Below are positions 13,901 to 49,194 of a stretch of 64,000 bases of DNA, piece by piece. The translations under genes were made by a program, and so were the position numbers. Origin of the DNA: Macrostomum hystrix (taxonomy: Eukaryota > Animalia > Platyhelminthes); NCBI GenBank assembly GCA_950097015.1, contig CATNEN010000024.1, positions 2,294,001-2,358,000 on the forward strand. Direction: 5' to 3'. Numbering within the stretch: the first letter of the stretch is position 1; each line of letters starts with the position of its first letter. The notes beneath the pieces were generated by a model, which was not told the origin of the DNA, did no database searches, and saw only the letters and a list, made by a program, of their open reading frames with translations.

Positions 13901-16900
13901 AACTGATGTATCAATCAATCATTCAACTGATGTAGCAATCGATCATTCAACTGATGTATCAATCGATCATTCAACTGATGGATCAATCGATCATTCAACT
14001 GATGTATCAATCGATCATTCAACTGATGTATCAATCGATCATCCAACTGATGTATCAATCGATCATCCAACTGATGTATCAATCGATCATTCAACTGATG
14101 TATCAATCGATCATTCAACTGATGTATCAATCGATCATTCAACTGATGTATCAATCGATCATTCAACTGATGTATCAATCGATCATTCAACTGATGTATC
14201 AATCGATCATTCAACTGATGTAGCAATCGATCATTCAACTGATGTAGCAATCGATCATTCAACTGATGTATCAATCGATCATTCAACTGATGTATCAATC
14301 GATCTCCAACTGATGAATCAATCGATCATTCAACTGATGTATCAATCGATCATTCAACTGATGTATCAATCGATCATTCAACTGATGTATCAATCGATCA
14401 TTCAACTGATGGATCAATCGATCATCCAACTGATGTATCAATCGATCTCCAACTGATGTATCAATCGATCTCCAACTGATGTATCAATCGATCATTCAAC
14501 TGATGGATCAATCGATCATCCAACTGATGTATCAATCGATCATCCAACTGATGTATCAATCGATCATTCAACTGATGTATCAATCGATCATCCAACTGAT
14601 GTATCAATCGATCTCCAACTGATGTATCAATCGATCTCCAACTGATGTATCAATCGATCATTCAACTGATGTATCAATCGATCATCCAACTGATGGATCA
14701 ATCGATCTCCAACTGATGTAGCAATCGATCATTCAACTGATGTATCAATCGATCATTCAACTGATGTATCAATCGATCTCCAACTGATGTAGCAATCGAT
14801 CATTCAACTGATGTAGCAATCGATCATTCAACTGATGTAGCAATCGATCATTCAACTGATGTATCAATCGATCATTCAACTGATGTAGCAATCGATCATT
14901 CAACTGATGTAGCAATCGATCATTCAACTGATGTATCAATCGATCATTCAACTGATGTATCAATCGATCATTCAACTGATGTAGCAATCGATCATTCAAC
15001 TGATGTATCAATCGATCATTCAACTGATGTATCAATCGATCATTCAACTGATGTATCAATCGATCATTCAACTGATGGATCAATCGATCATTCAACTGAT
15101 GTATCAATCAATCATTCAACTGATGGATCAATCAATCATTCAACTGATGTAGCAATCGATCATTCAACTGATGTATCAATCGATCATTCAACTGATGAAT
15201 CAATCGATCATTCAACTGATGGATCAATCGACCATTCAACTGATGTATCAATCAATCATTCAACTGATGGATCAATCGATCATTCAACTGATGGATCAAT
15301 CGATCATTCAACTGATGTATCAATCGATCATTCAACTGATGAATCAATCGATCATCCAACTGATGTATCAATCGATCATTCAACTGATGTATCAATCAAT
15401 CATTCAACTGATGGATCAATCAATCATTCAACTGATGTAGCAATCGATCATTCAACTGATGTATCAATCGATCATTCAACTGATGTATCAATCGATCATT
15501 CAACTGATGTATCAATCGATCATTCAACTGATGGATCAATCGATCATTCAACTGATGTATCAATCAATCATTCAACTGATGGATCAATCAATCATTCAAC
15601 TGATGTAGCAATCGATCATTCAACTGATGTATCAATCGATCATTCAACTGATGAATCAATCGATCATTCAACTGATGTATCAATCGATCATTCAACTGAT
15701 GGATCAATCGATCATTCAACTGATGTATCAATCGATCATTCAACTGATGTATCAATCGATCATCCAACTGATGTATCAATCGATCATTCAACTGATGTAT
15801 CAATCGATCATTCAACTGATGGATCAATCGATCATTCAACTGATGTATCAATCAATCATTCAACTGATGGATCAATCGATCATCCAACTGATGTATCAAT
15901 CGATCATTCAACTGATGTAGCAATCGATCATTCAACTGATGTATCAATCGATCATTCAACTGATGTATCAATCGATCATTCAACTGATGTATCAATCGAT
16001 CATTCAACTGATGTATCAATCGATCATTCAACTGATGTATCAATCAATCATTCAACTGATGTATCAATCAATCATTCAACTGATGTAGCAATCGATCATT
16101 CAACTGATGTATCAATCGATCATTCAACTGATGAATCAATCGATCATTCAACTGATGGATCAATCGATCATTCAACTGATGTATCAATCAATCATTCAAC
16201 TGATGGATCAATCAATCATTCAACTGATGTATCAATCGATCATTCAACTGATGAATCAATCGATCATTCAACTGATGTAGCAATCGATCATTCAACTGAT
16301 GTAGCAGTCGATCATTCAACTGATGTATCAATCGATCATTCAACTGATGTATCAATCGATCATTCAACTGATGTAGCAGTCGATCATTCAACTGATGTAT
16401 CAATCGATCATTCAACTGATGTAGCAGTCGATCTTCCAACTGATGTATCAATCGATCATTCAACTGATGTATCAATCGATCATTCAACTGATGTAGCAAT
16501 CGATCATTCAACTGATGTATCAATCGATCATTCAACTGATGTATCAATCGATCTCCAACTGATGAATCAATCGATCATTCAACTGATGTATCAATCGATC
16601 ATCCAACTGATGGATCAATCGATCTCCAACTGATGTATCAATCGATCATCCAACTGATGTATCAATCGATCATTCAACTGATGTATCAATCGATCATCCA
16701 ACTGATGGATCAATCGATCTCCAACTGATGTATCAATCGATCATCCAACTGATGTATCAATCGATCATTCAACTGATGGATCAATCGATCATCCAACTGA
16801 TGTATCAATCGATCATTCAACTGATGTATCAATCGATCATTCAACTGATGTAGCAGTCGATCATCCAACTGATGTATCAATCGATCATTCAACTGATGTA

Positions 16901-19900
16901 GCAATCGATCATTCAACTGATGTAGCAGTCGATCATTCAACTGATGTAGCAGTCGATCATTCAACTGATGTATCAATCGATCTCCAACTGATGTATCAAT
17001 CAATCATTCAACTGATGTAGCAATCGATCATTCAACTGATGTATCAATCGATCATCCAACTGATGTATCAATCGATCATCCAACTGATGTATCAATCGAT
17101 CATTCAACTGATGGATCAATTGATCATTCAACTGATGTATCAATCGATCATCCAACTGATGTATCAATCGATCATCCAACTGATGTATCAATCGATCATT
17201 CAACTGATGGATCAATTGATCATTCAACTGATGTATCAATCGATCATCCAACTGATGTATCAATCGATCTCCAACTGATGTATCAATCGATCATTCAACT
17301 GATGTAGCAGTCGATCATCCAACTGATGTATCAATCGATCATTCAACTGATGTATCAATCGATCATTCAACTGATGTAGCAGTCGATCATCCAACTGATG
17401 GATCAATCGATCATTCAACTGATGTATCAATCGATCATTCAACTGATGTATCAATCGATCATCCAACTGATGTATCAATCGATCATCCAACTGATGTATC
17501 AATCGATCATTCAACTGATGTATCAATCGATCATTCAACTGATGGATCAATCGATCATTCAACTGATGTATCAATCGATCATTCAACTGATGGATCAATC
17601 GATCATTCAACTGATGTATCAATCGATCATTCAACTGATGTATCAATCGATCATTCAACTGATGTAGCAGTCGATCATCCAACTGATGTATCAATCGATC
17701 ATTCAACTGATGTATCAATCGATCATCCAACTGATGTATCAATCGATCATTCAACTGATGTAGCAGTCGATCATTCAACTGATGTATCAATCGATCTCCA
17801 ACTGATGTATCAATCAATCATTCAACTGATGTAGCAATCGATCATTCAACTGATGTATCAATCGATCATTCAACTGATGGATCAATCGATCATTCAACTG
17901 ATGTATCAATCGATCATTCAACTGATGTATCAATCGATCATCCAACTGATGTATCAATCGATCATCCAACTGATGTATCAATCGATCATTCAACTGATGT
18001 ATCAATCGATCATTCAACTGATGTATCAATCGATCATTCAACTGATGTATCAATCGATCATTCAACTGATGTATCAATCGATCATTCAACTGATGTATCA
18101 ATCGATCATTCAACTGATGTAGCAATCGATCATTCAACTGATGTAGCAATCGATCATTCAACTGATGTATCAATCGATCATTCAACTGATGTATCAATCG
18201 ATCTCCAACTGATGAATCAATCGATCATTCAACTGATGTATCAATCGATCATTCAACTGATGTATCAATCGATCATTCAACTGATGTATCAATCGATCAT
18301 TCAACTGATGGATCAATCGATCATCCAACTGATGTATCAATCGATCTCCAACTGATGTATCAATCGATCTCCAACTGATGTATCAATCGATCATTCAACT
18401 GATGGATCAATCGATCATCCAACTGATGTATCAATCGATCATCCAACTGATGTATCAATCGATCATTCAACTGATGTATCAATCGATCATCCAACTGATG
18501 TATCAATCGATCTCCAACTGATGTATCAATCGATCTCCAACTGATGTATCAATCGATCATTCAACTGATGTATCAATCGATCATCCAACTGATGGATCAA
18601 TCGATCTCCAACTGATGTAGCAATCGATCATTCAACTGATGTATCAATCGATCATTCAACTGATGTATCAATCGATCTCCAACTGATGTAGCAATCGATC
18701 ATTCAACTGATGTAGCAATCGATCATTCAACTGATGTAGCAATCGATCATTCAACTGATGTATCAATCGATCATTCAACTGATGTAGCAATCGATCATTC
18801 AACTGATGTAGCAATCGATCATTCAACTGATGTATCAATCGATCATTCAACTGATGTATCAATCGATCATTCAACTGATGTAGCAATCGATCATTCAACT
18901 GATGTATCAATCGATCATTCAACTGATGTATCAATCGATCATTCAACTGATGTATCAATCGATCATTCAACTGATGGATCAATCGATCATTCAACTGATG
19001 TATCAATCAATCATTCAACTGATGGATCAATCAATCATTCAACTGATGTAGCAATCGATCATTCAACTGATGTATCAATCGATCATTCAACTGATGAATC
19101 AATCGATCATTCAACTGATGGATCAATCGACCATTCAACTGATGTATCAATCAATCATTCAACTGATGGATCAATCGATCATTCAACTGATGGATCAATC
19201 GATCATTCAACTGATGTATCAATCGATCATTCAACTGATGAATCAATCGATCATCCAACTGATGTATCAATCGATCATTCAACTGATGTATCAATCAATC
19301 ATTCAACTGATGGATCAATCAATCATTCAACTGATGTAGCAATCGATCATTCAACTGATGTATCAATCGATCATTCAACTGATGTATCAATCGATCATTC
19401 AACTGATGTATCAATCGATCATTCAACTGATGGATCAATCGATCATTCAACTGATGTATCAATCAATCATTCAACTGATGGATCAATCAATCATTCAACT
19501 GATGTAGCAATCGATCATTCAACTGATGTATCAATCGATCATTCAACTGATGAATCAATCGATCATTCAACTGATGTATCAATCGATCATTCAACTGATG
19601 GATCAATCGATCATTCAACTGATGTATCAATCGATCATTCAACTGATGTATCAATCGATCATCCAACTGATGTATCAATCGATCATTCAACTGATGTATC
19701 AATCGATCATTCAACTGATGGATCAATCGATCATTCAACTGATGTATCAATCAATCATTCAACTGATGGATCAATCGATCATCCAACTGATGTATCAATC
19801 GATCATTCAACTGATGTAGCAATCGATCATTCAACTGATGTATCAATCGATCATTCAACTGATGTATCAATCGATCATTCAACTGATGTATCAATCGATC

Positions 19901-20651
19901 ATTCAACTGATGTATCAATCGATCATTCAACTGATGTATCAATCAATCATTCAACTGATGTATCAATCAATCATTCAACTGATGTAGCAATCGATCATTC
20001 AACTGATGTATCAATCGATCATTCAACTGATGAATCAATCGATCATTCAACTGATGGATCAATCGATCATTCAACTGATGTATCAATCAATCATTCAACT
20101 GATGGATCAATCAATCATTCAACTGATGGATCAATCGATCATTCAACTGATGTAGCAATCGATCATTCAACTGATGTATCAATCGATCATCCAACTGATG
20201 TATCAATCGATCATTCAACTGATGGATCAATCGATCATTCAACAGATGTATCAATCGATCATTCAACTGATGTATCAATCGATCATTCAACTGATGTATC
20301 AATCGATCATTCAACTGATGTATCAATCGATCATTCAACTGATGTATCAATCGATCATTCAACTGATGTAGCAATCGATCATTCAACTGATGTAGCAATC
20401 GATCATTCAACTGATGTATCAATCGATCATTCAACTGATGAATCAATCGATCATTCAACTGATGTAGCAATCGATCATTCAACTGATGTATCAATCGATC
20501 ATTCAACTGATGAATCAATCGATCATTCAACTGATGGATCAATCGATCATTCAACTGATGTATCAATCAATCATTCAACTGATGGATCAATCGATCATTC
20601 AACTGATGGATCAATCGATCATTCAACTGATGGATCAATAGATCATCCAAA
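10938..20651. repeat. 9.7-kb satellite of a 24-bp monomer (GATGTATCAATCGATCATTCAACT), ~405 copies, with a 3899-bp higher-order duplication
   Basis: Direct reading. Variants include GTAGCA, GGATCA, ATCCAA and a 23-bp ATCTCCAA form. ORF-track patterns recur at an exact +3899 offset. Confidence 0.98.
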
Positions 20652-20659
20652 CGTTCACT

Positions 20660-20940
20660 CACTCACTCTCAATAGATCAAGCAATTAATCCATCAATTAA
20701 TCAATTAATCAGACAATCAATTTATTTAAAAAAGCAACCAATCAATCAATCTGTCAATAAATTGATTAAAATAACCTAATAATCAATCAGTCAATCAACC
20801 ATCAGTCACTCACAAGTTATTAATCAAGTTAATCAATCAATCAACCAACCAATCAACGAGCCAGTCAATTTACCAATCAATGAATCACTCAGTCTATTAA
20901 CAAATCTATATTTTAAATTAACAATCAATCACATATCCAA
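20660..20940. repeat. Degenerate (AATC)n-like simple repeat tail of the satellite
   Basis: Runs such as AATCAATCAATCAACCAACCAATCAA continue from the end of the array. Confidence 0.7.
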
Positions 20941-21232
20941 TGGTAAAATGGTTGCATTCCTTCTATAATGAGCATCTCAAAAAATCTAAAGCAGCTCGTT
21001 TGCTCTCAATTTGAGAGCCCCCATTTTTCCTGAATCCCGAAACCCCTGCCCAGCGCAGTCTCGCCCAATTGGCCGGCGCATTTTTCCCCTCCTCCCCCGG
21101 CCTCAACTACCCACCGGCTCTCCGCGCCCATTGGGATTTCAGCTCGCATTTTCTTCGAAGCGAGAAAAGTAATCAGACCGAGAAAGACAACTTCTTCTGG
21201 GTTTGATTGATTGATTGATCGATAAATCGATA

Positions 21233-23469
21233 ATGCCGGACAGCAAACGAACGAGTGATGATTCAGCAATTGGAGTGACGGCAGTCAGGACCATCCCGTG
21301 CGGCGCCGCCTGCCACCAGCCGATGTCGAGGCTGTGGATGCAGCTGGGCTTTCTGGGCCGCCTGAACGACGATCGGCCAGTGCAGCCGCGCTCTGAGCTG
21401 CGGGTGAGTCCAAGGCCGAGACTGATGACATAACAGCACCAAATGCTCATGATGTAACACCACTAACCTCCAGTTACCCTCCAATGTCCTATCTCAATTG
21501 CCTCTCGCTACGTTTCTCTGCCACTGTCTCTACCCTCCACTGTCTCTACCCTCCACTGTCTCTACCCTCCACTGTCTCTACCCTCCACTGTCTCTACCTT
21601 CCACTGTCTCTACCCTCCACTGTCTCTACCCTCCACTGTCTCTACCCTCCACTGTCTCTACCCTCCACTGTCTCTACCCTCCACTGTCTCTACCCTCCAC
21701 TGTCTCTACCCTCCACTATCTCTACCCTCCACTGTCTCTACCCTCCACTGTCTCTACCCTCCACTGTCTCTACCCTCCACTATCTCTACCCTCCACTGTC
21801 TCTACCCTCCACTGTCTCTACCCTCCACTGTCTCTACCCTCCACTGTCTCTACCCTCCACTGTCTCTACCCTCCACTGTCTCTACCCTCCACTGTCTCTA
21901 CCCTCCACTATCTCTACCCTCCACTGTCTCTACCCTCCACTGTCTCTACCCTCCACTGTCTCTACCCTCCACTGTCTCTACCCTCCACTGTCTCTACCCT
22001 CCACTGTCTCTACCTTCCACTGTCTCTACCCTCCACTGTCTCTACCCTCCACTCTCTCTGCCCTCCACTGTCTCTACCCTCCACTGTCTCTACCCTCCAC
22101 TGTCTCTACCCTCAACACAAATCGAATCAACAAATCGAACCCGGCCTCGCCAAGGTCCAGCCGTCAGCCGACGGTCTGTCCCTCGTGGAACAGACTGGAA
22201 CCGATTGGACCTTCTGGCTGCGCGGAGCTCGCGATCGCTCTGAGCAGAACATGGAGCTGAAGCTGGCAGCCAATGAAGCTGCTCAGGCAGCTGGCTATTG
22301 CCTGCGTGCAACGCGCGACATTCAGCCGGGCGAGCAGCTGCTGCTGTGGTTCGCCGACTGCTGCGCCCTTGGCATGGGCGTGCCAGTTCTGACTGTGCTC
22401 AACATCAGGGGTGAGCTGATGCTATGAGCAAATCGGACTCAAGCAAAAACAAATCTTTGCATGAATATGATCATGTGAATACAGAGAAGCAAGAGGGAAT
22501 AGGGAATCAGTGAGATGCAAGATAGTTAAATGCAACACCTGTTAGTCAACAGCAACACCTGTTAGTCAACAGCAACACCTGTTAGTCAACAGCAACACCT
22601 GTTAGTCAACAGCAACACCTGTTAGTCAACAGCAACACCTGTTAGTCAACAGCAACACCTGTTAGTCAACAGCAACACCTTTTAGTCAACAGCAACACCT
22701 GTTAGTCAACAACAACACCTGTTAGTCAACAGCAACACCTTTTAGTCAACAGCAACACCTGTTAGTCAACAACAACACCTGTTAGTCAACAGCAACACCT
22801 GTTAGTCAACAGCAACACCTGTTAGTCAACAACACCAGTTCTTATTATTCGATACAGCTACCTGTTCGTAAAAGCTTATCTAATTGATCCTTACCTGATT
22901 AGGCATGCTAAAATTAAGGCCGATACTTTTCAGGCCACGGCTGCTACCAGTGCCACCAGTGCAATCGCTGCTTTCGCTATCCGAACGTACTAAAAGCACA
23001 CCTGATGCGATTCTGTCTGGCAGCGCCGCCGCCGCCGATGCCTTCTCTACCGCTTCTCATTTTTTCTGTATACACGGGGCTTCTGTCGCAGCATCCACAG
23101 CAGCAGCAGCAGCAACAGCAACCGCCGCCGCCGTTGCCAGCCGAACAGCAAGCCTCGAGCATCTGTAAGCAGTTGAACATGAAGTGCTCCAGACACATGT
23201 GCTCCTATTGCGGCAAAGCCTACTCGAGGCGCTACGGCCTAAAGATTCATCTGCGCACCCACACTGGCTTCAAGCCGCTCCGTTGCCAGGTCTGCCAGAG
23301 ACCGTTTGGCGACCCCAGCAACCTCAACAAGCACACCAGACTGCACGCCCTAGGAGACACGCCCTACAGGTGCGGTCTTTGCGGCAAAGTTCTGGTCCGA
23401 AGACGCGACCTAGATAGACACCATCGGTCCAAGCACCAGGCAGTTGAGAAATCAATGAGCACTTTTTGA
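21233..23469 (+). CDS. PRDM13: PR/SET domain zinc-finger protein 13; exons 21233-21403, 22155-22410, 22934-23469; 320 aa
   Basis: GT-AG junctions are phase-compatible (0, 1). PR domain WLRGARDRSEQN...RATRDIQPGEQLLLWF is followed by the first finger YQCHQCNRCFRYPNVLKAHL. C-terminal fingers CGKAYSRRYGLKIHLRTHTGFKPLRCQVCQRPFGDPSNLNKH...CGKVLVRRRDLDRH are diagnostic of PRDM13. The true 5' start is less certain. Confidence 0.93.
21521..22112. repeat. 16-bp minisatellite (CCACTGTCTCTACCCT) x~37, PRDM13 intron 1
   Basis: Direct reading. Confidence 0.97.
22532..22836. repeat. 20-bp minisatellite (GCAACACCTGTTAGTCAACA) x~15, PRDM13 intron 2
   Basis: Direct reading. Confidence 0.97.
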
Positions 23470-40926: not shown

Positions 40927-43008
40927 GTGCCAATTCCTGCTCCAACAATGGAATTGCGTACCAAGGCCTCAACGGAGAGCCGCGCACCTGCTGCGGCTGC
41001 CAAGAGCGGCACACCACCCTGCAGACGAGGACAACGCAGTGTGCGTCGGCGTATTGAACGACGCCGCGAGCAAAACTGCCGTGGCCGACACCGTGCCCGC
41101 GAGCGTCGCACTGCTGGCAGAACCTCTATGCGCAGTGGTACGGTTCCTCCGGGTGGCGCCGGGGACCTAGAGGTCCACAACCAACGGATCCAAGCTGAAC
41201 CAAATTGCACGCCGCATAAACAGAAACAACAACTAAGAGTCGCGACTTGGAACTGCCGGACTCTGCGAGCAGGTTGGAGGCAACATCTACTGGCAAAATT
41301 AGCTACCGATCTGCAACTAGACATTGTAATGCTGCAGGAGCTATCTATTAAAACCGATCCTGGGCTCCATCAGGAGCACCTCGGTGGCGGCTGGCTCCTT
41401 CAGTTCACTTCAGCAGACGCAAAAGGCCGAGGAGGAGTTGGTGTCCTCACCAGCCCACGGCTACAGAAATGTTTTCGATGCGAAAGCTTATCGCCAAGAC
41501 TACTACGAGTCGACCTTCGTCTCCGCACCCGTAATATTCACTTATTCTGTGCCTATGCACCCACAGCTGCGCACCCGATGGAGCACCGTCAATTTCTGGA
41601 GTTCCTCTCGGCGCAACTGGAGGCGGTTGCTCAGCGTGACTCAGTGCTGGTGCTTGGAGACCTCAACGCTGTTATGCGAAAATCTGAACGAGCTCTCTTT
41701 GTCACCCCGCGCGAAAACAACAACACCGATGCACTAATGGATTTCGTGGACCGGCACGATCTGGTCTCAGCGAACACTCTCTTTAGGAAACCAGCTGTGA
41801 GACTGGCAACGTTCACTTCCGGCTTCCGGCCAGGTAGGGGCACGGTGAATCAGATTCTCGCTTTGCGCCGCATTTTAGAAGAGACCCGTATCCACCAGTC
41901 GGCGGTCATCTGCATCTTCGTGGATTTTCTAAAGGCCTTCGACTCGGTGTCGAGACGGGTCATCCCGAAGATCCTGCGCGCGTACCATGTGCCTGAGCAG
42001 CTGGTAACGGCTGTGATGGCCCTGTACCAGGAGACCAGGGCGGCAGTTGTGACGCCGGACGGCCTATCCGATTTCTTCGACACGACCTCCGGTGTGCTGC
42101 AGGGCGACACACTCGCCCCCTTTCTGTTCGTCCTGGTCCTGGACTGGGTGCTGCGCACTGGCCTCCCTGACGACGCCAACGGCTTTCTGCTCTGTCGCAG
42201 GACAAGCAGCCGACACCCCGAAAGACGACTCTCTGTCCTGGCGTACGCGGACGACCTGGCGCTGCTGTCCAGCTCAATCGAAGGTGCTCAGCATCTGCTG
42301 GACAAGCTGACTGCGGCGGCGGCAATGGTCGGGCTGTCCGTGAACACCAAGAAAACAATGGTGCTGACCGTCCCAAATGACCTCAACGGCGAGATCTTCT
42401 GCCACAGCGTAAATGGGCAAGCGGCATTGCTGCCGCGCTGCGAGACCTTCATCTATCTCGGCGGTCAAGTGCCCGACATCCTGGACGACATGGCGCGACG
42501 CAGGGCGCTTGCCTGGGCAGCTTTTCGCACCCTGCGGACTGTCCTGCAGTGCCCCACGCTGCCGGATCGGCTGAGAGGGCGGTTGTTTCAAGCCGTCATA
42601 GAGACCGTCTTTCTCTACAACGCTCAAACGTGGACTCTGAACGGCACACAGGAGAAGCAACTCGATGCCGCCCACGCCGGACTCCTGCGAGCCGCCTTCG
42701 GCGTCCACTATTCGCCGACTGCCGTCACCAACACCAGCAACGATGAGCTCTATCGCCGGGCCCAGCTCTGCCGGCCAAGTCAGCTGCTGCGCATCCGGCG
42801 CCTGCAGCTGGCTGGCCACGTCATCCGTGCGGAGCAGCGCTGCCCCGAGCCACTGCAGGACGTGCTGCTGCTTTCCCTGCAGGGGCCCCGGCGGCGTGGT
42901 CAGGCGAGGGCGCTACGCTATCCTGAACTGCTATTGACTGACGCTGAGATCTCTGACCCTCGTGGACTGACAATTCTGCGCCACTCTGCTCTTGCGCGTG
43001 CCTTTTGA
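40927..43008 (+). CDS. Truncated APE endonuclease fused in frame to reverse transcriptase (693 aa)
   Basis: APE motifs VATWNCRTL, IVMLQE, AYAPT and VLGDLNA. RT motifs GFRPGRG, FVDFLKAFDSV, GVLQGDTLAPFLF, LAYADDLAL and YLGG, then an RTE-type C-terminus (LAGHVIR, GPRRRG). Confidence 0.9.
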   Translation: MPIPAPTMELRTKASTESRAPAAAAKSGTPPCRRGQRSVRRRIERRREQNCRGRHRARERRTAGRTSMRSGTVPPGGAGDLEVHNQRIQAEPNCTPHKQKQQLRVATWNCRTLRAGWRQHLLAKLATDLQLDIVMLQELSIKTDPGLHQEHLGGGWLLQFTSADAKGRGGVGVLTSPRLQKCFRCESLSPRLLRVDLRLRTRNIHLFCAYAPTAAHPMEHRQFLEFLSAQLEAVAQRDSVLVLGDLNAVMRKSERALFVTPRENNNTDALMDFVDRHDLVSANTLFRKPAVRLATFTSGFRPGRGTVNQILALRRILEETRIHQSAVICIFVDFLKAFDSVSRRVIPKILRAYHVPEQLVTAVMALYQETRAAVVTPDGLSDFFDTTSGVLQGDTLAPFLFVLVLDWVLRTGLPDDANGFLLCRRTSSRHPERRLSVLAYADDLALLSSSIEGAQHLLDKLTAAAAMVGLSVNTKKTMVLTVPNDLNGEIFCHSVNGQAALLPRCETFIYLGGQVPDILDDMARRRALAWAAFRTLRTVLQCPTLPDRLRGRLFQAVIETVFLYNAQTWTLNGTQEKQLDAAHAGLLRAAFGVHYSPTAVTNTSNDELYRRAQLCRPSQLLRIRRLQLAGHVIRAEQRCPEPLQDVLLLSLQGPRRRGQARALRYPELLLTDAEISDPRGLTILRHSALARAF

Positions 43009-43531
43009 CGGCAGCCCCTCTGGCTTCGGCCTTGGGTTGTCGTCCTTTGTTGTTGTTGTTGTTGCAAAAACAGGTAGCTTGTATATAGAAAACATATATA
43101 TTTATAATATAATATATAGTGTAAGCAAGCAAAAAGTTTTAGCTTTTTACAATTATGGAACATATGAGTTATAAAATAAGTTGCAATAAAAAATAGAGCC
43201 CAAAACTGGAACTGTATTACTGTACCATAACAGAACAGCGCAATAATGTAATGTAGTAAACTATGAGATTGCCACTTAGCAAGACAGATTTATAGATTAG
43301 AAAACAATTTTTTTCTAAAAATAACAAATTAGTATATGTTAGGAATAATTGCTATATTTATTGTTGTATTCTTGAAGTAACGAATACAGAGATTCCAATT
43401 GTAGTGTCGGTAAATGTAAGTATAGCGCCGAAAGGAGCACTCGGCAGTCGACTGGATAAGCGTATATTTGTAACAGCAGTATTATTAAATACTGGAAAGG
43501 TTCTTGAGTGTGTGCACCGCGCGGGGGTTTC

Positions 43532-43658
43532 TATTTATAGCCTGGGGAGCGAGTGGGAGAACTTTCTAGAAAGTTCTCATAGATAGCCCGCGGGGGAGGC
43601 GCAGAGAAGATTCTGGAAACAACAGAGTGTTATAACAAGTGGTAGAAAGTTCTGGAAA
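43532..43658 (-). promoter_or_regulatory. 3' LTR promoter: three heat-shock elements plus TATA
   Basis: nGAAn arrays at 43557-43578 (4 units, perfect palindrome), 43605-43619 and 43644-43658 (3 units each). TATAAATA on the minus strand at 43539-43532. Confidence 0.8.
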
Positions 43659-43732
43659 ACTATTTACGGAATTATCGTAACGAAACCCACAACACCTCCC
43701 CACCAAAACTGTGAGTACAGCTGATAGAAAGT

Positions 43733-46700
43733 CTATAAGTCCATTTGTAGCCGTGGCTTTCGCTGCCTAGCCGACCGTCGTGGATTATCTGGTCCGTAGG
43801 GCGGCGGGTGTTGGACTTGGTCCGGCGCTCGCCATCCTGGAGGCCTGGGTCGAGATCCTGGATGTGCCACCGCTGGTGTGGCCGGCAGCATCAGGTGGCC
43901 GGCCGTTTCGTTTTGTTGAGTCGGCAGTGATCCTGGCTCGCTGTCTTCCGCGGACACGTGTCGCGGTTGAAGCTGGTCGAAGTGCCGTCGCCACACCGGG
44001 CCGCTTGGGACAACCTTGACGTTGACGCTGCGGCTGCCGTGCCGCTTGGTGACCACTGCCGGAACCCAGCGGCCTTCCTTCTCGCGGCGTGGTCCGTAGT
44101 AGCGAGCGTAGACCGGATCTCCGACGTTGTAGCCTTCTCGGACGCGAGACACCTTTTTCCGAGCTCTGGACTCTTCGGCCTGCTTGACTTGGCGATCCTG
44201 GGCGAGATGGGCTGGAGATGGCAGCAGAGTATCAATCTGCGTCCTGATCTGCCGGCCATTTAGGAGTTCGCTCGGAGAGTAGCCGTTGACCGCAGGAGTC
44301 CGTCGGTACTGCATCAGGAACTGCTGTAGCGCCCTGGCAGGTGGCAGGCTGGATTTCTTCAGGGCCTTCTTGAAGGTCTGAACCAGTCGTTCGGCCGCTC
44401 CGTTTGTTGCAGGATGATACGGAGCTCCTGTGAGGTGCGCGATGCCGTGTTCGCGACACCAAGCTTGAAACTCCTCAGCCATGAATGCCGCTGCATTGTC
44501 TGTGACGATGGCGTGAGGGTAGCCGAAGTGGGCGAAGTCTTCTTCCAGAAGCTCGATCGTTGCCCGCGTTGACATGGATTGCGTCGGGTGTATGCATGGG
44601 TACTTCGAGTAGGCGTCCGTGAGCACTAGCCAGTTGGTGCCGAGGAAGTTGACTGCGTGATCCAGATGTAGGCGACTCCAAGGCTTCTCAGGCATCATCC
44701 ACGGATGAACGGCGGCCTTTGGCGGATGATTTTGGTGCTCAGCGCAGCTATGGCAGCCGCGGCACAGGTGCTCGACGTCGTCGTCGATGTTCGGCCAGTA
44801 GACTGCCGATCGAGCCAGCTGCTTCATCCTCTGCATTCCAAAGTGTCCGAGGTGGAGTATTTTCAGCACCTCCTTCCGAAGGTTTTGAGGAATCACAAGA
44901 CGACAGCCCTGCAGAAGACATCCGTTGCAGCAGGACAGCGAATCTTTGACTTTCCGCAGGCGGGCCAGCTCAGCGTCCTCGTCTCGCCCGATTGGTGGCC
45001 AACCTTCTCGACAGTAGCGCATGGCGGTGGAGATGACTGGGTCCCTCGATGATTCCTTGGCTACGGCTGAGGCGTCAGCCGGTCGGATCTGCAGGCTCAG
45101 GACCTTGATCGCACAGACCATGTCGAAGTCGGCTGTGCTCTCCTCCCCGTCGAAGTCTGGGTCGTCTCCGACTGGCAGGCGACTTAAGGCGTCCGCATTT
45201 CCGTGACTCTTCGTCTGGCGGTACTCGATTTCGTAGGTGAAATTGTGGAGCAGGTTCGCCCAACGAGCCAGTCGGTTTGCTGCCATCACCGGTGTCTCCT
45301 TTTCGGGCCCAAATAGCGAAATCAACGGCTTATGGTCCGTGACCAGGATGAACTTGCGGTTGAACAAGTATTGGAAAAACTTCTTTAGGCCGAAGATGAT
45401 TGAAAGGGCTTCCTTCTGAATCTGAGGATAGCGGCGCTGAGCATCCGTCAGAGACTTTGAAGCGTTGGCGATCGGCCGCTCGCTACCATCCGGGTAGCGG
45501 TGGAACAGGACGGCGCCGATCCCGACGTTGGATGCGTCGCAGGAGAGCCCGAGAGGGAGGTCGGCATTGTAGTGGACCAGCACGTTGTCCGACGAGAGCT
45601 CCTCCTTGATCTGTTCAAAGGCCCGCTGCTCCGCGTCGCCCCATGTCCATGGTGCGTCCTTCCTGGTGAGTCGGTACAGCGGCTCAGAGATCGTGGCCAT
45701 GCTTGGCGGCAGAAACTTTGCGTAGAACTGGACCGAGCCGAGGAATGACCGGAGGCTGGACACGTCCTTTGGTGGAGGCATTTCGCGGACAGCGTCCACC
45801 TTGGTTCCCTTGGCGATGCCTTCTTTTGACAGTACATAGCCAAGGAACTCGATGCTGGGCATGGCGAATTTGCACTTCTCCCGTCGGCAGCGAAGTCCCT
45901 TGTCAGAAAGGCGTTGGAAAAGCCGGCGTAGGTTTGCGAGATGCTCATCAGCGGTCGCGCCGCCGACCAGGTAGTCGTCCAAGTAGAAAACGACTCCGGG
46001 CAGATCACCGGCTACCATTTCCATGATGAACTGGAACTCACCCACTGCAGACTTCGGGCCGAAAGCGAGCCGCTTCTGAAGAAGCACACCCCGGTGGGTG
46101 CTCAGTGCCAGGCGCCTCTGACTCATCGGTCCCAACTCGATCTGGTTGTAGGCGTCGGCCAGATCTACCTTTGAGAAGCAGTAGCTGCCTCCCAGCTTCT
46201 GTAGCAGTTCCTCTGGGAGGGGCAGCGGGTGACGGTTGTCTTCCAGCTGCGGGTTGATAGTGCACGAGTAGTCTCCGCAGACTCGCAGTTTCGGCTGCTC
46301 TGAGCCGGTCGAGGGCTTTCGCACGGGGACCACGGGCGTCCCGTAGTCATTGAAGTCAGTAGGCTCCCAGATGCCTCTCCTGATGCCCTCGTCGTAGGCG
46401 CGCTCGAGCTCCTCGCGGATGGCGAAGGGGACAGGCCTAGCCTTCCGGAACACCGGCTTTGCATCCGGGTTAAACTGCAACTCGAGCTTGAAGTCCTTGA
46501 GGCAACCCAGCTCGTCCTTCCACAGGTCCGGGAATTCGTCGCAAAGATTTCGGCAGGCCTTTTGAAGAGCCTCGTCCGGCGACAGGTGGTCAAACACTGC
46601 GTTGACTTCTTGAATGGCGCTGGCAGCGCCGAGCAGTTTGTCGACGGAGATTCCCAACAGCTTCGTGGCGGTCCGGCCGAGTAGATTCAAGCCGGGCACC

Positions 46701-47995
46701 TGTGTGACGATGTACTGGATGTCGTGCTCATGAGCTGAGCCAGGCAATGTCGTTTTCCCGACGAAGGTACCTAGTACCGGTAAGTCGTGTCGGCTGGCGG
46801 ACTCGTAGCGTGACATCGCTACTTCGAGCGGCGGCGTCCCCAGCTTCTTCCAGAATGACTCTGTGATGAAGTTGCCGTTTGTCGCAGTGTCGACCTCGAT
46901 GGCGAGAGCCTTGCCTTGGATGTGGATCGACACTTCCAGCTTAGGCAGGTCGTCCTCGGTTCGGGCTACAGCATGTACAAGCACATGCTCCTCGACCTGT
47001 TTCACTGGCTTCTTGAAGTTCGCCGCAGGGGCGGATCCTTTGGCCTTGGAACGGCAGACAGGTTCTAGGTGACCCACCTTTTTGCAGTGCCGGCAGGTCG
47101 CGTCTTTGAATCGGCAATCGTTTGCCCGATGGTTCTTCGCTCCGCAGCGGTAGCACGAACCAGACGCAGAGTCAGTAGTAGACCTGGAAGCAGTAGAATC
47201 TGTCGTAAATTTCGCCGAAGTGGCTCCGGGTCGCCGAACCTTCTGCTTAACCTTGTTTACGGGGCTGGATTTGTCTCCGTAAACCGTCTCCTTGGCGACT
47301 CGGGCGGCTTCCTCTGTCTCGATGGCGATCTCGACAGCCCGGGCGAACGTGAGCTCTTCCACCTTTAATTTGAACAAAGCTTTGAGTACTGCTTCGTTCC
47401 TCACTGAGCAGATGAAACGCGTGCGCAGCGCCTCGTCCAGTGGATCTTTGATGGAAGAGAAATCGCAGGTGGTTGCATCCTGGCGGATTCTCGCAGCCAT
47501 TTCCTGGATCGTCTCACCCGGTTTCCGCCGCATGTCGCTCCAGAACCGGAAACGCTCCCGCACGATGAAGCGCTTGGTGTCATACTGTTCTTCCATGAAC
47601 TTCTCAATCTCGTCCATAGTGAGCTTGTTGATCTCCTTCCGCGGCGTCTGCTGCGCTGCCAAGTTTGAGAGAAGCTTGTAGACAGACGGAGACTGGTTCG
47701 TCAGGAACACCTGAGCCTTCTTGTCGTCGGGTATGGAGTTCGCGCCCGTGAAGGTGCAGAATCTGGCCAAGTAGTCGGGCCAGAGCTCGGACGTGGCGTC
47801 GAATGGCGAGAAACTCGGAGTCGACGTCGTCACATGCGTCGGCAAAGCTGCAGCCTGGGACTGGTCCGCTGCAGGCTTTAGAGACCGAATGAGGTCGAGC
47901 ATCATCTGCCGGTCAGCGTTCCGCTGTTGGCGCTCTTCTTCCATCTGCTGCCGTAGGAGGCTGATTATATCCTCGTCTTGCATCGTTTCGGGCAT
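43733..47995 (-). CDS. Gag-Pol polyprotein, single 1420-aa ORF
   Basis: Domain order: Gag with CCHC knuckles (CYRCGAKNHRANDC, CRHCKKVGHLEPVC), protease (EVDTA), RT (YLDD), RNase H (CDAS, KEAL, TDHKPL), then integrase HHCC and D-D-E (HLDH, TDNA, AERLV). This is Gypsy order with no stops. Confidence 0.97.
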   Translation of the reverse strand: MPETMQDEDIISLLRQQMEEERQQRNADRQMMLDLIRSLKPAADQSQAAALPTHVTTSTPSFSPFDATSELWPDYLARFCTFTGANSIPDDKKAQVFLTNQSPSVYKLLSNLAAQQTPRKEINKLTMDEIEKFMEEQYDTKRFIVRERFRFWSDMRRKPGETIQEMAARIRQDATTCDFSSIKDPLDEALRTRFICSVRNEAVLKALFKLKVEELTFARAVEIAIETEEAARVAKETVYGDKSSPVNKVKQKVRRPGATSAKFTTDSTASRSTTDSASGSCYRCGAKNHRANDCRFKDATCRHCKKVGHLEPVCRSKAKGSAPAANFKKPVKQVEEHVLVHAVARTEDDLPKLEVSIHIQGKALAIEVDTATNGNFITESFWKKLGTPPLEVAMSRYESASRHDLPVLGTFVGKTTLPGSAHEHDIQYIVTQVPGLNLLGRTATKLLGISVDKLLGAASAIQEVNAVFDHLSPDEALQKACRNLCDEFPDLWKDELGCLKDFKLELQFNPDAKPVFRKARPVPFAIREELERAYDEGIRRGIWEPTDFNDYGTPVVPVRKPSTGSEQPKLRVCGDYSCTINPQLEDNRHPLPLPEELLQKLGGSYCFSKVDLADAYNQIELGPMSQRRLALSTHRGVLLQKRLAFGPKSAVGEFQFIMEMVAGDLPGVVFYLDDYLVGGATADEHLANLRRLFQRLSDKGLRCRREKCKFAMPSIEFLGYVLSKEGIAKGTKVDAVREMPPPKDVSSLRSFLGSVQFYAKFLPPSMATISEPLYRLTRKDAPWTWGDAEQRAFEQIKEELSSDNVLVHYNADLPLGLSCDASNVGIGAVLFHRYPDGSERPIANASKSLTDAQRRYPQIQKEALSIIFGLKKFFQYLFNRKFILVTDHKPLISLFGPEKETPVMAANRLARWANLLHNFTYEIEYRQTKSHGNADALSRLPVGDDPDFDGEESTADFDMVCAIKVLSLQIRPADASAVAKESSRDPVISTAMRYCREGWPPIGRDEDAELARLRKVKDSLSCCNGCLLQGCRLVIPQNLRKEVLKILHLGHFGMQRMKQLARSAVYWPNIDDDVEHLCRGCHSCAEHQNHPPKAAVHPWMMPEKPWSRLHLDHAVNFLGTNWLVLTDAYSKYPCIHPTQSMSTRATIELLEEDFAHFGYPHAIVTDNAAAFMAEEFQAWCREHGIAHLTGAPYHPATNGAAERLVQTFKKALKKSSLPPARALQQFLMQYRRTPAVNGYSPSELLNGRQIRTQIDTLLPSPAHLAQDRQVKQAEESRARKKVSRVREGYNVGDPVYARYYGPRREKEGRWVPAVVTKRHGSRSVNVKVVPSGPVWRRHFDQLQPRHVSAEDSEPGSLPTQQNETAGHLMLPATPAVAHPGSRPRPPGWRAPDQVQHPPPYGPDNPRRSARQRKPRLQMDL

Positions 47996-48264
47996 GATTG
48001 TAGTAGCTTGATCCTTCGGTCAATAGTGACAGTCGTTGTAGATTAGACGTCCTCGAAGTTGATCAAGATCCTGCTTGCGACGCCAGAAAATCCCTGTTGT
48101 ATTCTTGAAGTAACGAATACAGAGATTCCAATTGTAGTGTCGGTAAATGTAAGTATAGTGCCGAAAGGAGCACTCGGCAGTCGACTGGATAAGCGTATAT
48201 TTGTAACAGCAGTATTATTAAATACTGGAAAGGTTCTTGAGTGTGTGCACCGCGCGGGGGTTTC

Positions 48265-48391
48265 TATTTATAGCCTGGGGAGCGAGTGGGAGAACTTTCT
48301 AGAAAGTTCTCATAGATAGCCCGCGGGGGAGGCGCAGAGAAGATTCTGGAAACAACAGAGTGTTATAACAAGTGGTAGAAAGTTCTGGAAA
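48265..48391 (-). promoter_or_regulatory. 5' LTR promoter: three heat-shock elements plus TATA
   Basis: Identical motifs at 48290-48311, 48338-48352 and 48377-48391. TATA at 48272-48265. Confidence 0.8.
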
Positions 48392-49194
48392 ACTATTTAC
48401 GGAATTATCGTAACGAAACCCACAACATTTATGTACTGTAAATTGAGAAAATCTAGCAATTAATGATTGTTGAGCAAAGACTAAAAAACTCTAGTTAAGT
48501 AATAAAGAACAGTACACTAGGAAAGGAAGAATGTTTTTTTAAGATTTGGTTTTAACTAAGGCTGCTATTTATTAAAAACAAATAACAAATACCACTACAC
48601 AGGCAGATAATGCAGAAAGGTAATGACACATATGTTCCAAAACAAAATAAATATGGTGCCAAAAAATAGTATCTGAACAATTAGTCTTAAATAAATTAGA
48701 AAGCAAAAATAATTGCATAAAAATTCATTTAGATATTTCATATCTAGAGCTATAAATAGGTTATACCTACATTATCATTAATTTAATAGCTAAGAACTTA
48801 AAATGCATCAGAACATCTCGTCAAAATGTATTTGCCTCATAAGCTTCCTGGAATGTTAGAATTTTGAATAGATTCAAGACACCGGACATGATTTTAGGAT
48901 ACAAACCGAAAACATTGATAGGAACAAAATTTATATATACAAATTTTTACACAATTAAAGGGAAAATATTGCGCTAAAACATATTTAAGTTTTGTCAACT
49001 GTAAAATATTGTTTGAAACGTGTAGTTCAAGGAAATGTTTTCTCGTAAATTTCGAAACATGAACACGGCATGCAAATATTTTATAATATATTTTAGATCA
49101 CAATTCACGGCCTAACGAATCGTGTTCGTGTTCGAAGTAGAACTGTTAGGTTTTATCGACATTTTTAGTTCACTGTTTTAGATATTGTTAAGTA

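What the first reader, a model, noticed from the sequence alone, without database searches (positions are those of the whole stretch)
43362..48427. Intact Gypsy retrotransposon whose LTR is an hsp70-style heat-shock promoter (ONSEN-like element in an animal)
Seen: each LTR has three perfect alternating nGAAn arrays. These are aGAAc-tTTCt-aGAAa-gTTCt (a 22-bp palindrome, 43557-43578), aGAAg-aTTCt-gGAAa (43605-43619) and aGAAa-gTTCt-gGAAa (43644-43658). On the transcribed strand all lie in U3, the nearest 17 bp upstream of TATAAATA, with a GC-box-like GGGGAGGCG between them. The element has near-identical LTRs (1 visible difference in 333 bp), a TSD, PBS, PPT and an uninterrupted Gag-Pol. Known: HSF trimers bind three or more inverted nGAAn units, proximal HSE-TATA spacing like this typifies hsp70, and HSE-driven LTRs are best known from the plant Copia ONSEN. 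Inference: an active, heat or proteotoxic-stress-inducible Mag-like family that spreads HSF-responsive promoters through this genome.
Basis: partly seen in the sequence, partly recalled or inferred. Interest (0 to 1): 0.85.

Follow-up and report, generated by a model that had tools for sequence, protein, structure and literature searches.

The report
Flatworm Gypsy retrotransposon with heat-shock promoter
This is a young, intact Gypsy-type retrotransposon of the flatworm Macrostomum hystrix whose LTR promoter carries three canonical heat-shock-factor sites before a TATA box; this design was shown in 2025 to make such elements heat-inducible in the sister species M. lignano, so it is a new example of a known trick.

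Summary
Window 43362-48427 (minus strand) holds a 5,066-bp Ty3/Gypsy element with 333-bp LTRs (1 mismatch), a 5-bp TSD, a PPT, a PBS-like site and an open 1,420-aa Gag-Pol. Each U3 has three perfect HSE arrays (3, 3 and 4 units) ending 19 nt before TATAAATA. All perfect HSE trimers in the 64-kb window lie in these LTRs (about 0.9 expected per 64 kb).

The assembly size (220,453,370 bases, 42 contigs) identifies the host as Macrostomum hystrix. The family is recently active: at least 23 LTR pairs, 17/17 checked copies with perfect TSDs, 10/17 with identical LTRs. Three LTR subfamilies differ widely in sequence (about 65% identity where measured), yet all keep three HSE arrays plus the TATA box. 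Related elements from a sponge and from marine and other metagenomes also carry HSEs 10-35 nt before a TATA.

In M. lignano, HSE-bearing Mag/CsRN1/Gmr1 LTR elements are induced more than 250-fold and need their HSEs (PMC12801592). This is therefore a new member of a known kind, not the first animal ONSEN. Other first-stage readers flagged what look like further copies of this LTR family elsewhere in this genome.

The parts
43357..43361 (.). Target-site duplication TTTAT (left copy)
   Evidence: Identical 5-mer flanks both LTRs. All 17 full-length copies checked have perfect 5-bp TSDs.
43362..43694 (-). 3' LTR (333 bp, TG...CA)
   Evidence: Direct repeat of 48095-48427 with 1 mismatch.
43532..43539 (-). 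TATAAATA box of the 3' LTR
   Evidence: Read from the sequence. Conserved as TATAAATA or AATAAATA in all three LTR subfamilies.
43557..43578 (-). Proximal HSE: four alternating nGAAn units forming a 22-bp palindrome, 19 nt upstream of the TATA box
   Evidence: The exact HSE+TATA module occurs 54 times in the genome, against 0 for the control pattern.
43605..43619 (-). Middle HSE, three units
43644..43658 (-). Distal HSE, three units
43695..43704 (-). Polypurine tract GGTGGGGAGG abutting the 3' LTR
   Evidence: The same GGGGAGG|TG junction is seen in relatives.
43733..47995 (-). Single Gag-Pol ORF, 1,420 aa. Approximate domains: Gag/CCHC 47111-47158, protease 46649-46933, RT 45833-46210, RNase H 45239-45643, integrase zinc finger plus core 44303-44893.
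   Evidence: YLDD, DAS and D,D35E residues are present and invariant in 8 relatives. The N-terminus resembles retrotransposon Gag.
48068..48085 (-). PBS-like TGGCGTCGCAAGCAGGAT, 9 nt downstream of the 5' LTR
   Evidence: Relatives have a TGGCGCAGTCGGCAGG-type (tRNA-Ser-like) site at the same offset. No exactly complementary tRNA gene was found.
48095..48427 (-). 5' LTR. It holds the same three HSE arrays (48290-48311, 48338-48352, 48377-48391) and the TATA box (48265-48272). This is the promoter that would drive the element.
48428..48432 (.). Target-site duplication TTTAT (right copy)

Best explanation
This is an autonomous, recently transposing Ty3/Gypsy (Ty3/Mdg4) LTR retrotransposon of the flatworm Macrostomum hystrix. 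Its U3 is built as a heat-shock promoter. Three arrays of inverted nGAAn units, each large enough for an HSF trimer, sit 19-117 nt upstream of a TATAAATA box. Inferred mechanism: under heat or proteotoxic stress, activated HSF trimers bind these arrays in the 5' LTR and recruit the transcription machinery to the TATA box. This would produce a burst of genomic RNA encoding Gag-Pol, which is then reverse-transcribed and integrated with 5-bp TSDs. The identical module in 3' LTRs and solo LTRs scatters at least 54 potential HSF-responsive promoters over the genome. Shown here: the anatomy, the non-random and conserved HSEs, family activity, host identity and the presence of HSF genes. Inferred: HSF binding and stress induction, by analogy with the experimentally tested HSE-bearing LTR elements of M. 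lignano.
For: 1) Statistics. All 8 perfect trimer matches in 64 kb lie in the two LTRs, against 0.92 expected.
2) Conservation in this genome. All 30 best LTR copies keep the arrays; one copy lost one unit. The L049-type LTR is only about 65% identical, yet 26 of 30 HSE core bases are identical (Fisher p=0.011) and it has arrays of 4, 3 and 3 units. The L055-type LTR has arrays of 5, 3 and 3 units plus TATAAATA amid diverged spacers. An unrelated Gypsy family (38% identical) has none.
3) Conservation outside this genome. Among relatives with 50-69% protein identity, 7 of 22 independent U3 lineages hold a perfect trimer, against 0.10 expected (P about 2e-11). Density is 0.86 per kb in U3 and 0.019 per kb in 264 kb of their coding sequence. 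In the query's own 12-member clade (SH-aLRT 92), 8 have a perfect trimer. Of the other four, L063 and L070 have 2-unit HSEs 26-33 nt before a TATA, L068 has one 2-unit HSE with no TATA within 60 nt downstream, and L061 has none.
4) Activity. There are 54 exact HSE+TATA modules, about 23 pairs. 17 of 17 copies have perfect TSDs and 10 of 17 have identical LTR pairs. 11 of 17 have open ORFs.
5) Host. The assembly statistics equal those of M. hystrix. At least 4 HSF DNA-binding-domain loci are present.
6) Precedent. In M. lignano, four HSE-bearing Ty3/Mdg4 families rise more than 250-fold at 37 °C, and mutating the HSEs of a three-HSE Mag LTR abolishes reporter induction (PMC12801592). The HSE form given there, nTTCnaGAAnnTTC, fits all three arrays here.
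Against: In M. lignano, two one-HSE Copia families were not induced, so HSEs alone are not always sufficient. The closest relative found (L061, 80% identical in RT-IN) has a TATA-less LTR without HSEs, and the tree needs at least 6 gains or losses of the trait, so the trait is labile. The TSS, the R region and the poly(A) signal are not mapped, and no canonical AATAAA lies in this LTR.
Confidence: 0.75

Rival explanations
1. The HSEs are real HSF sites, but in vivo the family is kept silent by small RNAs or chromatin, or needs further factors. Heat would then give little or no induction, and transposition would be driven by other conditions.
For: Two HSE-bearing Copia families of M. lignano were not heat-induced. 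Seventeen runs guessed to be RNA, of one species label, hold next to none of the element's words. That is compatible with silence, and equally with low basal expression.
Against: Every M. lignano Ty3/Mdg4 family with HSEs was strongly induced. Three arrays have been kept across three diverged LTR subfamilies here, which argues that they matter for propagation.
Confidence: 0.12
2. The arrays recruit HSF mainly in non-stress settings such as embryogenesis, the germline or stem cells during regeneration. This would give the element access to heritable cells, and heat inducibility would be a by-product.
For: The M. lignano LTR reporter was active in embryos after heat, and the authors discuss embryonic and stem-cell windows. 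This genome has at least 4 HSF-domain loci, leaving room for specialised paralogues.
Against: No data here bear on tissue specificity. The M. lignano reporter needed heat and was not seen in gonads.
Confidence: 0.08
3. The nGAAn arrays are chance sequence, or are sites for another factor, with no link to HSF.
Against: About 0.005 trimers are expected per LTR, against three arrays observed. Only the core triplets are conserved while the spacers drift. The arrays recur in non-alignable LTRs of relatives, always upstream of a TATA. The 2-nt spacing fits HSF rather than STAT-type TTCnnnGAA sites (established knowledge).
Confidence: 0.03

Closest known systems
HSE-containing Ty3/Mdg4 LTR retrotransposons of Macrostomum lignano (Mlig-id115|Mag, Mlig-id36/55|CsRN1, Mlig-id38|Gmr1/Osvaldo; Ustyantsev et al., Mob DNA 2025, PMC12801592)
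   Same: Same host genus and same superfamily. Canonical HSEs lie in U3 upstream of a TATA box. Mlig-id115 has three HSEs of the form nTTCnaGAAnnTTC and about 19 copies, against three arrays of that form and about 23 full-length copies here.
   Different: The host species differs (M. hystrix). Identity with Mlig-id115 could not be tested because no sequence was available. Induction and HSE necessity are shown there and only inferred here. This report adds conservation across three LTR subfamilies and across relatives in other hosts, whereas the paper argues for late, independent acquisitions.
ONSEN/ATCOPIA78 of Arabidopsis and other Brassicaceae (Ty1/Copia)
   Same: An LTR promoter that hijacks the heat-shock factor through HSEs. 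Stress-triggered transcription comes from the element's own LTR.
   Different: A different superfamily: integrase lies after RT here and before RT in Copia. A different kingdom and a convergent origin. ONSEN has direct HSFA2 binding and transposition data.
Helitron1_CE of Caenorhabditis elegans (Garrigues et al. 2019, cited in PMC12801592)
   Same: A transposon family that carries HSEs and disperses HSF-1-responsive sites through an animal genome.
   Different: A rolling-circle DNA transposon without an LTR promoter. The copies are mostly non-autonomous.
Steamer and Steamer-like elements / Gypsy 'C-clade' ('K02A2.6-like' annotations) of marine animals
   Same: A single Gag-Pol ORF of about 1,400 aa and elements of about 5 kb. 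The closest named proteins are 'K02A2.6-like' or come from a snail and sponges at 65-69% identity. PMC8905726 links that annotation to Steamer-like C-clade elements. The cross-phylum similarity recalls their reported horizontal transfer.
   Different: No Steamer sequence was available for a tree. None of the Steamer papers read here mentions HSEs.

Membership tests
Ty3/Gypsy (Ty3/Mdg4, Metaviridae) LTR retrotransposon | Direct LTRs ending TG...CA, flanked by a short TSD | tested here: met
   333-bp LTRs with 1 mismatch, TGTTG...ACAACA termini and a 5-bp TSD.
Ty3/Gypsy (Ty3/Mdg4, Metaviridae) LTR retrotransposon | Pol domain order protease - RT - RNase H - integrase | tested here: met
   Pfam hits in that order along the 1,420-aa ORF.
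Ty3/Gypsy (Ty3/Mdg4, Metaviridae) LTR retrotransposon | PBS after the 5' LTR and PPT before the 3' LTR | tested here: inconclusive
   The PPT abuts the LTR. A PBS-like TGGCG... lies 9 nt from the LTR and resembles the tRNA-Ser-type sites of relatives, but no exactly matching tRNA gene was found.
Mag clade / Gypsy C-clade (Steamer-like) | RT groups with Mag/SURL/Steamer references in a phylogeny | not testable with these tools
   No GyDB or Steamer reference sequences were reachable. The only evidence is the 'K02A2.6-like' naming of relatives and the literature link in PMC8905726.
Mag clade / Gypsy C-clade (Steamer-like) | Single Gag-Pol ORF without frameshift, no chromodomain | tested here: met
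   One 1,420-aa ORF and no chromo hit. These features are suggestive only, not diagnostic.
HSE-bearing heat-activated LTR retrotransposons (functional class: ONSEN, Mlig-id115 and others) | Canonical HSE (at least 3 inverted nGAAn units) in U3 upstream of the TATA box or TSS | tested here: met
   Three arrays of 3, 3 and 4 units, the nearest 19 nt from TATAAATA.
HSE-bearing heat-activated LTR retrotransposons (functional class: ONSEN, Mlig-id115 and others) | HSEs conserved among family members | tested here: met
HSE-bearing heat-activated LTR retrotransposons (functional class: ONSEN, Mlig-id115 and others) | Transcription rises on heat stress | not testable with these tools
No RNA holder is on record.
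HSE-bearing heat-activated LTR retrotransposons (functional class: ONSEN, Mlig-id115 and others) | Induction depends on the HSEs and on HSF | not testable with these tools
   This needs a reporter, RNAi or ChIP. HSF genes are present.
ONSEN (Ty1/Copia) | Copia domain order, with integrase before RT | tested here: not met
   Integrase is C-terminal to RT/RNase H. The element works like ONSEN but is not a member.
Mlig-id115|Mag family of M. lignano (80/80 rule) | At least 80% nucleotide identity over at least 80% of the length to the published family | not testable with these tools
   The supplementary sequences are not held. Only the HSE count (3) and motif form agree.

The most novel reading that the evidence does not exclude
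The HSE-then-TATA U3 is not a late, species-specific acquisition. It would be a long-lived hallmark of a Gypsy sub-clade that occurs, probably through horizontal transfer, in flatworms, sponges and unidentified marine animals, and that rebuilds the module as its LTRs turn over. In M. hystrix, transposons rather than host chaperone genes would then carry most of the genome's strongest HSF sites. At least seven repeat families have HSE3-TATA modules, and 21 of the 23 perfect five-unit arrays lie in repeats.
Probability: 0.4. Interest if true: 0.65.

Novelty: new member of a known kind. Interest (0 to 1): 0.45.

Why it matters
It extends the only experimentally validated animal case of HSE-driven LTR retrotransposons from M. 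lignano to a second species, M. hystrix. This species has a clean, near-haploid, highly contiguous 42-contig assembly (N50 about 13.5 Mb), in which new insertions after heat stress could be scored far more easily than in the redundant M. lignano assembly.

The comparative data also sharpen an open question: whether heat-shock promoters in transposons are repeatedly invented or inherited along a lineage. They show that a sizeable share of the genome's canonical HSF sites may be transposon-borne. That bears on how heat-shock regulons evolve and on transposon bursts under warming.

Tried and rejected
1) Expression. The look-up of sequencing runs found no holder on record as RNA, and names were coded.

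2) Host hsp70 promoter comparison. HSP20 genes do not lie next to the candidate host modules on C2. None of the 23 five-unit arrays lies at the hsp70 cluster.

3) PBS. No tRNA gene has exactly complementary acceptor ends.

4) Host phylum guesses. An arthropod was rejected (no R&R cuticle domain) and so was a nematode (no cuticle collagen). Both nulls are weak, because the control genomes did not ring either. Nuclear-receptor domains show a metazoan. The host was settled by the exact assembly statistics of M. hystrix.

5) GC box. It is not conserved in the sister LTR subfamilies.

6) Literature. The Steamer papers do not mention HSEs. The supplements of PMC12801592 are not held, so identity with Mlig-id115 is open.

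7) Other HSE-TATA repeat families. None lies in the window or in the fetched loci, so they could not be classified.

8) Consensus lines. The alignment tools printed consensus lines on their own. I did not use, save or extend them.
Full report
**Observation.** Reading the window and the repeat finder confirm two 333-bp direct repeats at 43362-43694 and 48095-48427. They differ at one position. They end TGTTG...ACAACA on the minus strand and are flanked by the 5-mer TTTAT on both sides.

Between them lies one open frame, 43733-47995 on the minus strand, of 1,420 aa. Pfam hits run in the order zinc knuckle, aspartic protease, RT, RNase H, integrase zinc finger, integrase core. The YLDD, DAS and D,D35E residues are present. 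The N-terminal third looks like a retrotransposon Gag. A purine tract GGTGGGGAGG abuts the 3' LTR. A TGGCG... primer-binding-like site lies 9 nt inside the 5' LTR.

**The HSEs are not chance.** On the transcribed strand each LTR carries TTCcaGAActTTC at 38-50, TTCcaGAAtcTTC at 77-89 and GAAcTTTCtaGAAagTTC at 119-136. TATAAATA follows at 156. The pattern GAAnnTTCnnGAA in either phase occurs 8 times in the 64-kb window, and every match is in these two LTRs. Dinucleotide-preserving shuffles give 0.92 on average and never more than 4.

**Host.** The window's assembly has 220,453,370 bases in 42 contigs. Table 1 of Wiberg et al. 2023 gives exactly these two numbers for Macrostomum hystrix (PMC10468722). 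The lead came from earlier notes of this scan, and I checked it in this way. Consistent with a non-ecdysozoan animal, the genome has nuclear-receptor ligand-binding domains. No arthropod cuticle domain and no nematode cuticle collagen were found, but these two nulls are weak because the control genomes did not ring either. It encodes at least four HSF DNA-binding domains and four intronless hsp70 genes.

**The family in this genome.**
- The LTR gives at least 40 hits of 98-100% identity.
- The exact proximal HSE-plus-TATA module occurs 54 times, against 0 for the reversed control. That is about 23 pairs at full-length spacing plus about 9 unpaired copies.
- Seventeen full-length copies were fetched. 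All have perfect 5-bp TSDs at different sites, 10 have identical LTR pairs, and the rest differ by 1-7 positions.
- Eleven of the 17 have an uninterrupted frame.

The family has therefore been transposing very recently.

**Conservation of the HSEs in this genome.** Near-identical copies say little: 30 of 30 keep the arrays, and one lost a unit. Two older subfamilies are more informative.
- The L049-type element is 94% identical in protein, its own LTR pair is 94.7% identical, and it carries stops. Its LTR is only about 65% identical to this one, yet 26 of the 30 HSE core bases are the same (Fisher p=0.011). It shows arrays of 4, 3 and 3 units.
- The L055-type element is 91% identical in protein. 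It has arrays of 5, 3 and 3 units and the same TATAAATAGAAAC core, with unrelated spacers.
- An unrelated Gypsy family of the same genome (38% identical, 241-bp LTRs) has no HSE.

The 'GC-box' is not kept in either sister subfamily.

**Relatives elsewhere.**
- The RT-integrase part is 65-80% identical to proteins from the snail Batillaria attramentaria, the sponges Ephydatia and Corticium ('K02A2.6-like'), and many 5-kb metagenome contigs. The whole Gag-Pol is 57-64% identical to eight of them.
- I fetched seven contigs by exact protein and 80 by a metagenome scan.
- Perfect HSE trimers are almost absent from 264 kb of their coding sequence (5 hits, 0.019 per kb). In the 450 nt after the ORF, which holds U3, they reach 0.86 per kb.
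- After collapsing similar LTRs, 7 of 22 independent lineages have a perfect trimer, against 0.10 expected from shuffles (Poisson P about 2e-11).
- In a maximum-likelihood tree of RT-RNase H-integrase, the query sits in a 12-member clade with SH-aLRT 92. Eight members have a perfect trimer 10-35 nt before a TATA. These include a contig of NCBI assembly GCA_029979705.1 and one from a Tara Oceans marine metagenome.
- The other four members have no perfect trimer. L063 and L070 have 2-unit HSEs 26-33 nt before a TATA. L068 has one 2-unit HSE with no TATA within 60 nt downstream. L061 has a TATA-less LTR without HSEs.
- The sponge Corticium element has a 4-unit array at the LTR start and a 2-unit array 15 nt before TATATAAA. 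A second clade, from one group of metagenomes, has a trimer at the very 5' end of the LTR.
- The trait needs at least 6 changes on the tree, against 12.3 for shuffled labels. It is clustered but labile. The data do not decide between old inheritance with losses and repeated gain.

**Mechanism.** The arrays have the canonical geometry for HSF trimers, and the 2-nt spacing excludes STAT-type sites (established knowledge). They lie where hsp promoters place them relative to the TATA box. The most likely working is HSF-driven, stress-induced transcription from the 5' LTR, with 3' and solo LTRs acting as dispersed HSF-responsive promoters.

This step is inferred and not shown here. No run holding the element is on record as RNA.

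**What is known.** Ustyantsev et al. (Mob DNA 2025, PMC12801592; preprint 10.1101/2024.12.18.629116) report canonical HSEs in the LTRs of M. lignano Ty3/Mdg4 families of the Mag, CsRN1 and Gmr1/Osvaldo clades.
- Four of these families rise by log2FC of about 8 at 37 °C.
- Mutating the HSEs of the three-HSE Mag family (19 copies; HSE form nTTCnaGAAnnTTC) abolishes heat activation of an LTR reporter.
- They discuss ONSEN, Helitron1_CE of C. elegans, weak Drosophila cases and heat-induced coral elements.
- They do not mention M. hystrix, and I found no paper on HSE-bearing elements in that species.

The present element is thus a new member, in a congener, of a kind already demonstrated. It works like ONSEN but is not a Copia element. 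Whether it belongs to the same family as Mlig-id115, or to the Mag clade at all, could not be tested. A literature lead connects 'K02A2.6-like' relatives to Steamer-like C-clade elements.

**Wider pattern in the genome.**
- The module TTCnnGAAnnTTC-N5-35-TATAAA occurs 211 times, against 69 for the reversed control.
- By my hand count, about 70 of the first 100 listed places belong to repeated sequences. This family gives 28 and the L055-type gives 3. At least five other families share identical modules. Two of them occur as pairs 4.71 kb and 3.75 kb apart, as LTR elements would.
- Of the 23 perfect five-unit arrays (control 2), 15 are one repeat confined to contig C1, and six more (five of one sequence plus one single-base variant) match the five-unit array of the L055-type LTR. 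None of the 23 lies at the hsp70 cluster.

**Verdict.** It is no longer novel as a concept.

Alignment tools printed consensus lines automatically.

Noticed in passing
G000-wide, e.g. C2:3576951/3581659, C3:9651055/9655762, C8:1142639/1147348, C1:11588968/11592721, C15:1215850/1219602: At least five other repeated families carry identical HSE-trimer-then-TATAAA modules. Two occur as pairs 4.71 kb and 3.75 kb apart, as LTR elements would. By hand count, about 70 of the first 100 genome-wide matches are repeat-borne.
   Followed up: partly
G000 contig C1, 15 places from 3537105 to 27096665: A perfect five-unit HSE array (GAACATTCTAGAACATTCTGGAA) is present in 15 identical copies, all on contig C1. 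21 of the genome's 23 perfect five-unit arrays lie in repeats, and none is at the hsp70 genes.
   Followed up: no
window 40927-43008 (+): A 693-aa ORF with an endonuclease/exonuclease/phosphatase domain and an RT domain, i.e. a LINE-type non-LTR retrotransposon. It ends 354 bp from the Gypsy element's 3' LTR.
   Followed up: partly
G000: C24:1302878, C39:7463611, C38:14190380, C39:10698374, C39:10679952: Four to five loci encode an HSF DNA-binding domain, more than the single HSF usual in invertebrates. This leaves room for specialised paralogues.
   Followed up: no
G000 C33:3867893-3873260 and C33:3896578-3901643: Two intronless hsp70 genes form a divergent pair, and two more lie on the same contig. 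One full-length copy of this retrotransposon family sits about 23 kb from the pair.
   Followed up: no
window 43733-47995 versus flanks; L061-L147: The element is 58% G+C in flanks of about 32-37%. Its whole Gag-Pol, Gag included, is 57-64% identical to elements from a sponge and marine metagenomes, and RT-IN is 69% identical to a snail's. This is suggestive of horizontal transfer, as reported for Steamer-like elements.
   Followed up: partly
window 46880-46890 region (protein residues 369-371): The protease active-site motif reads D-T-A rather than D-T/S-G. D369 and T370 are invariant in all eight aligned relatives.
   Followed up: no
L085, L090, L091, L110, L117, L135 (metagenome contigs Ga0210059_*, JGI24158J21664_* and similar): A sister clade of elements has its single perfect HSE trimer 10-15 nt from the very 5' end of the LTR, with no TATA nearby. 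Close relatives show the same site decayed.
   Followed up: partly
window 12001-22000: A long stretch with strongly negative GC skew (-0.21 to -0.40) and two 185-aa ORFs 3.9 kb apart (13361-13918 and 17260-17817, minus strand). This suggests a large tandem or dispersed repeat.
   Followed up: no
They were left out of all later searches.
   Followed up: no
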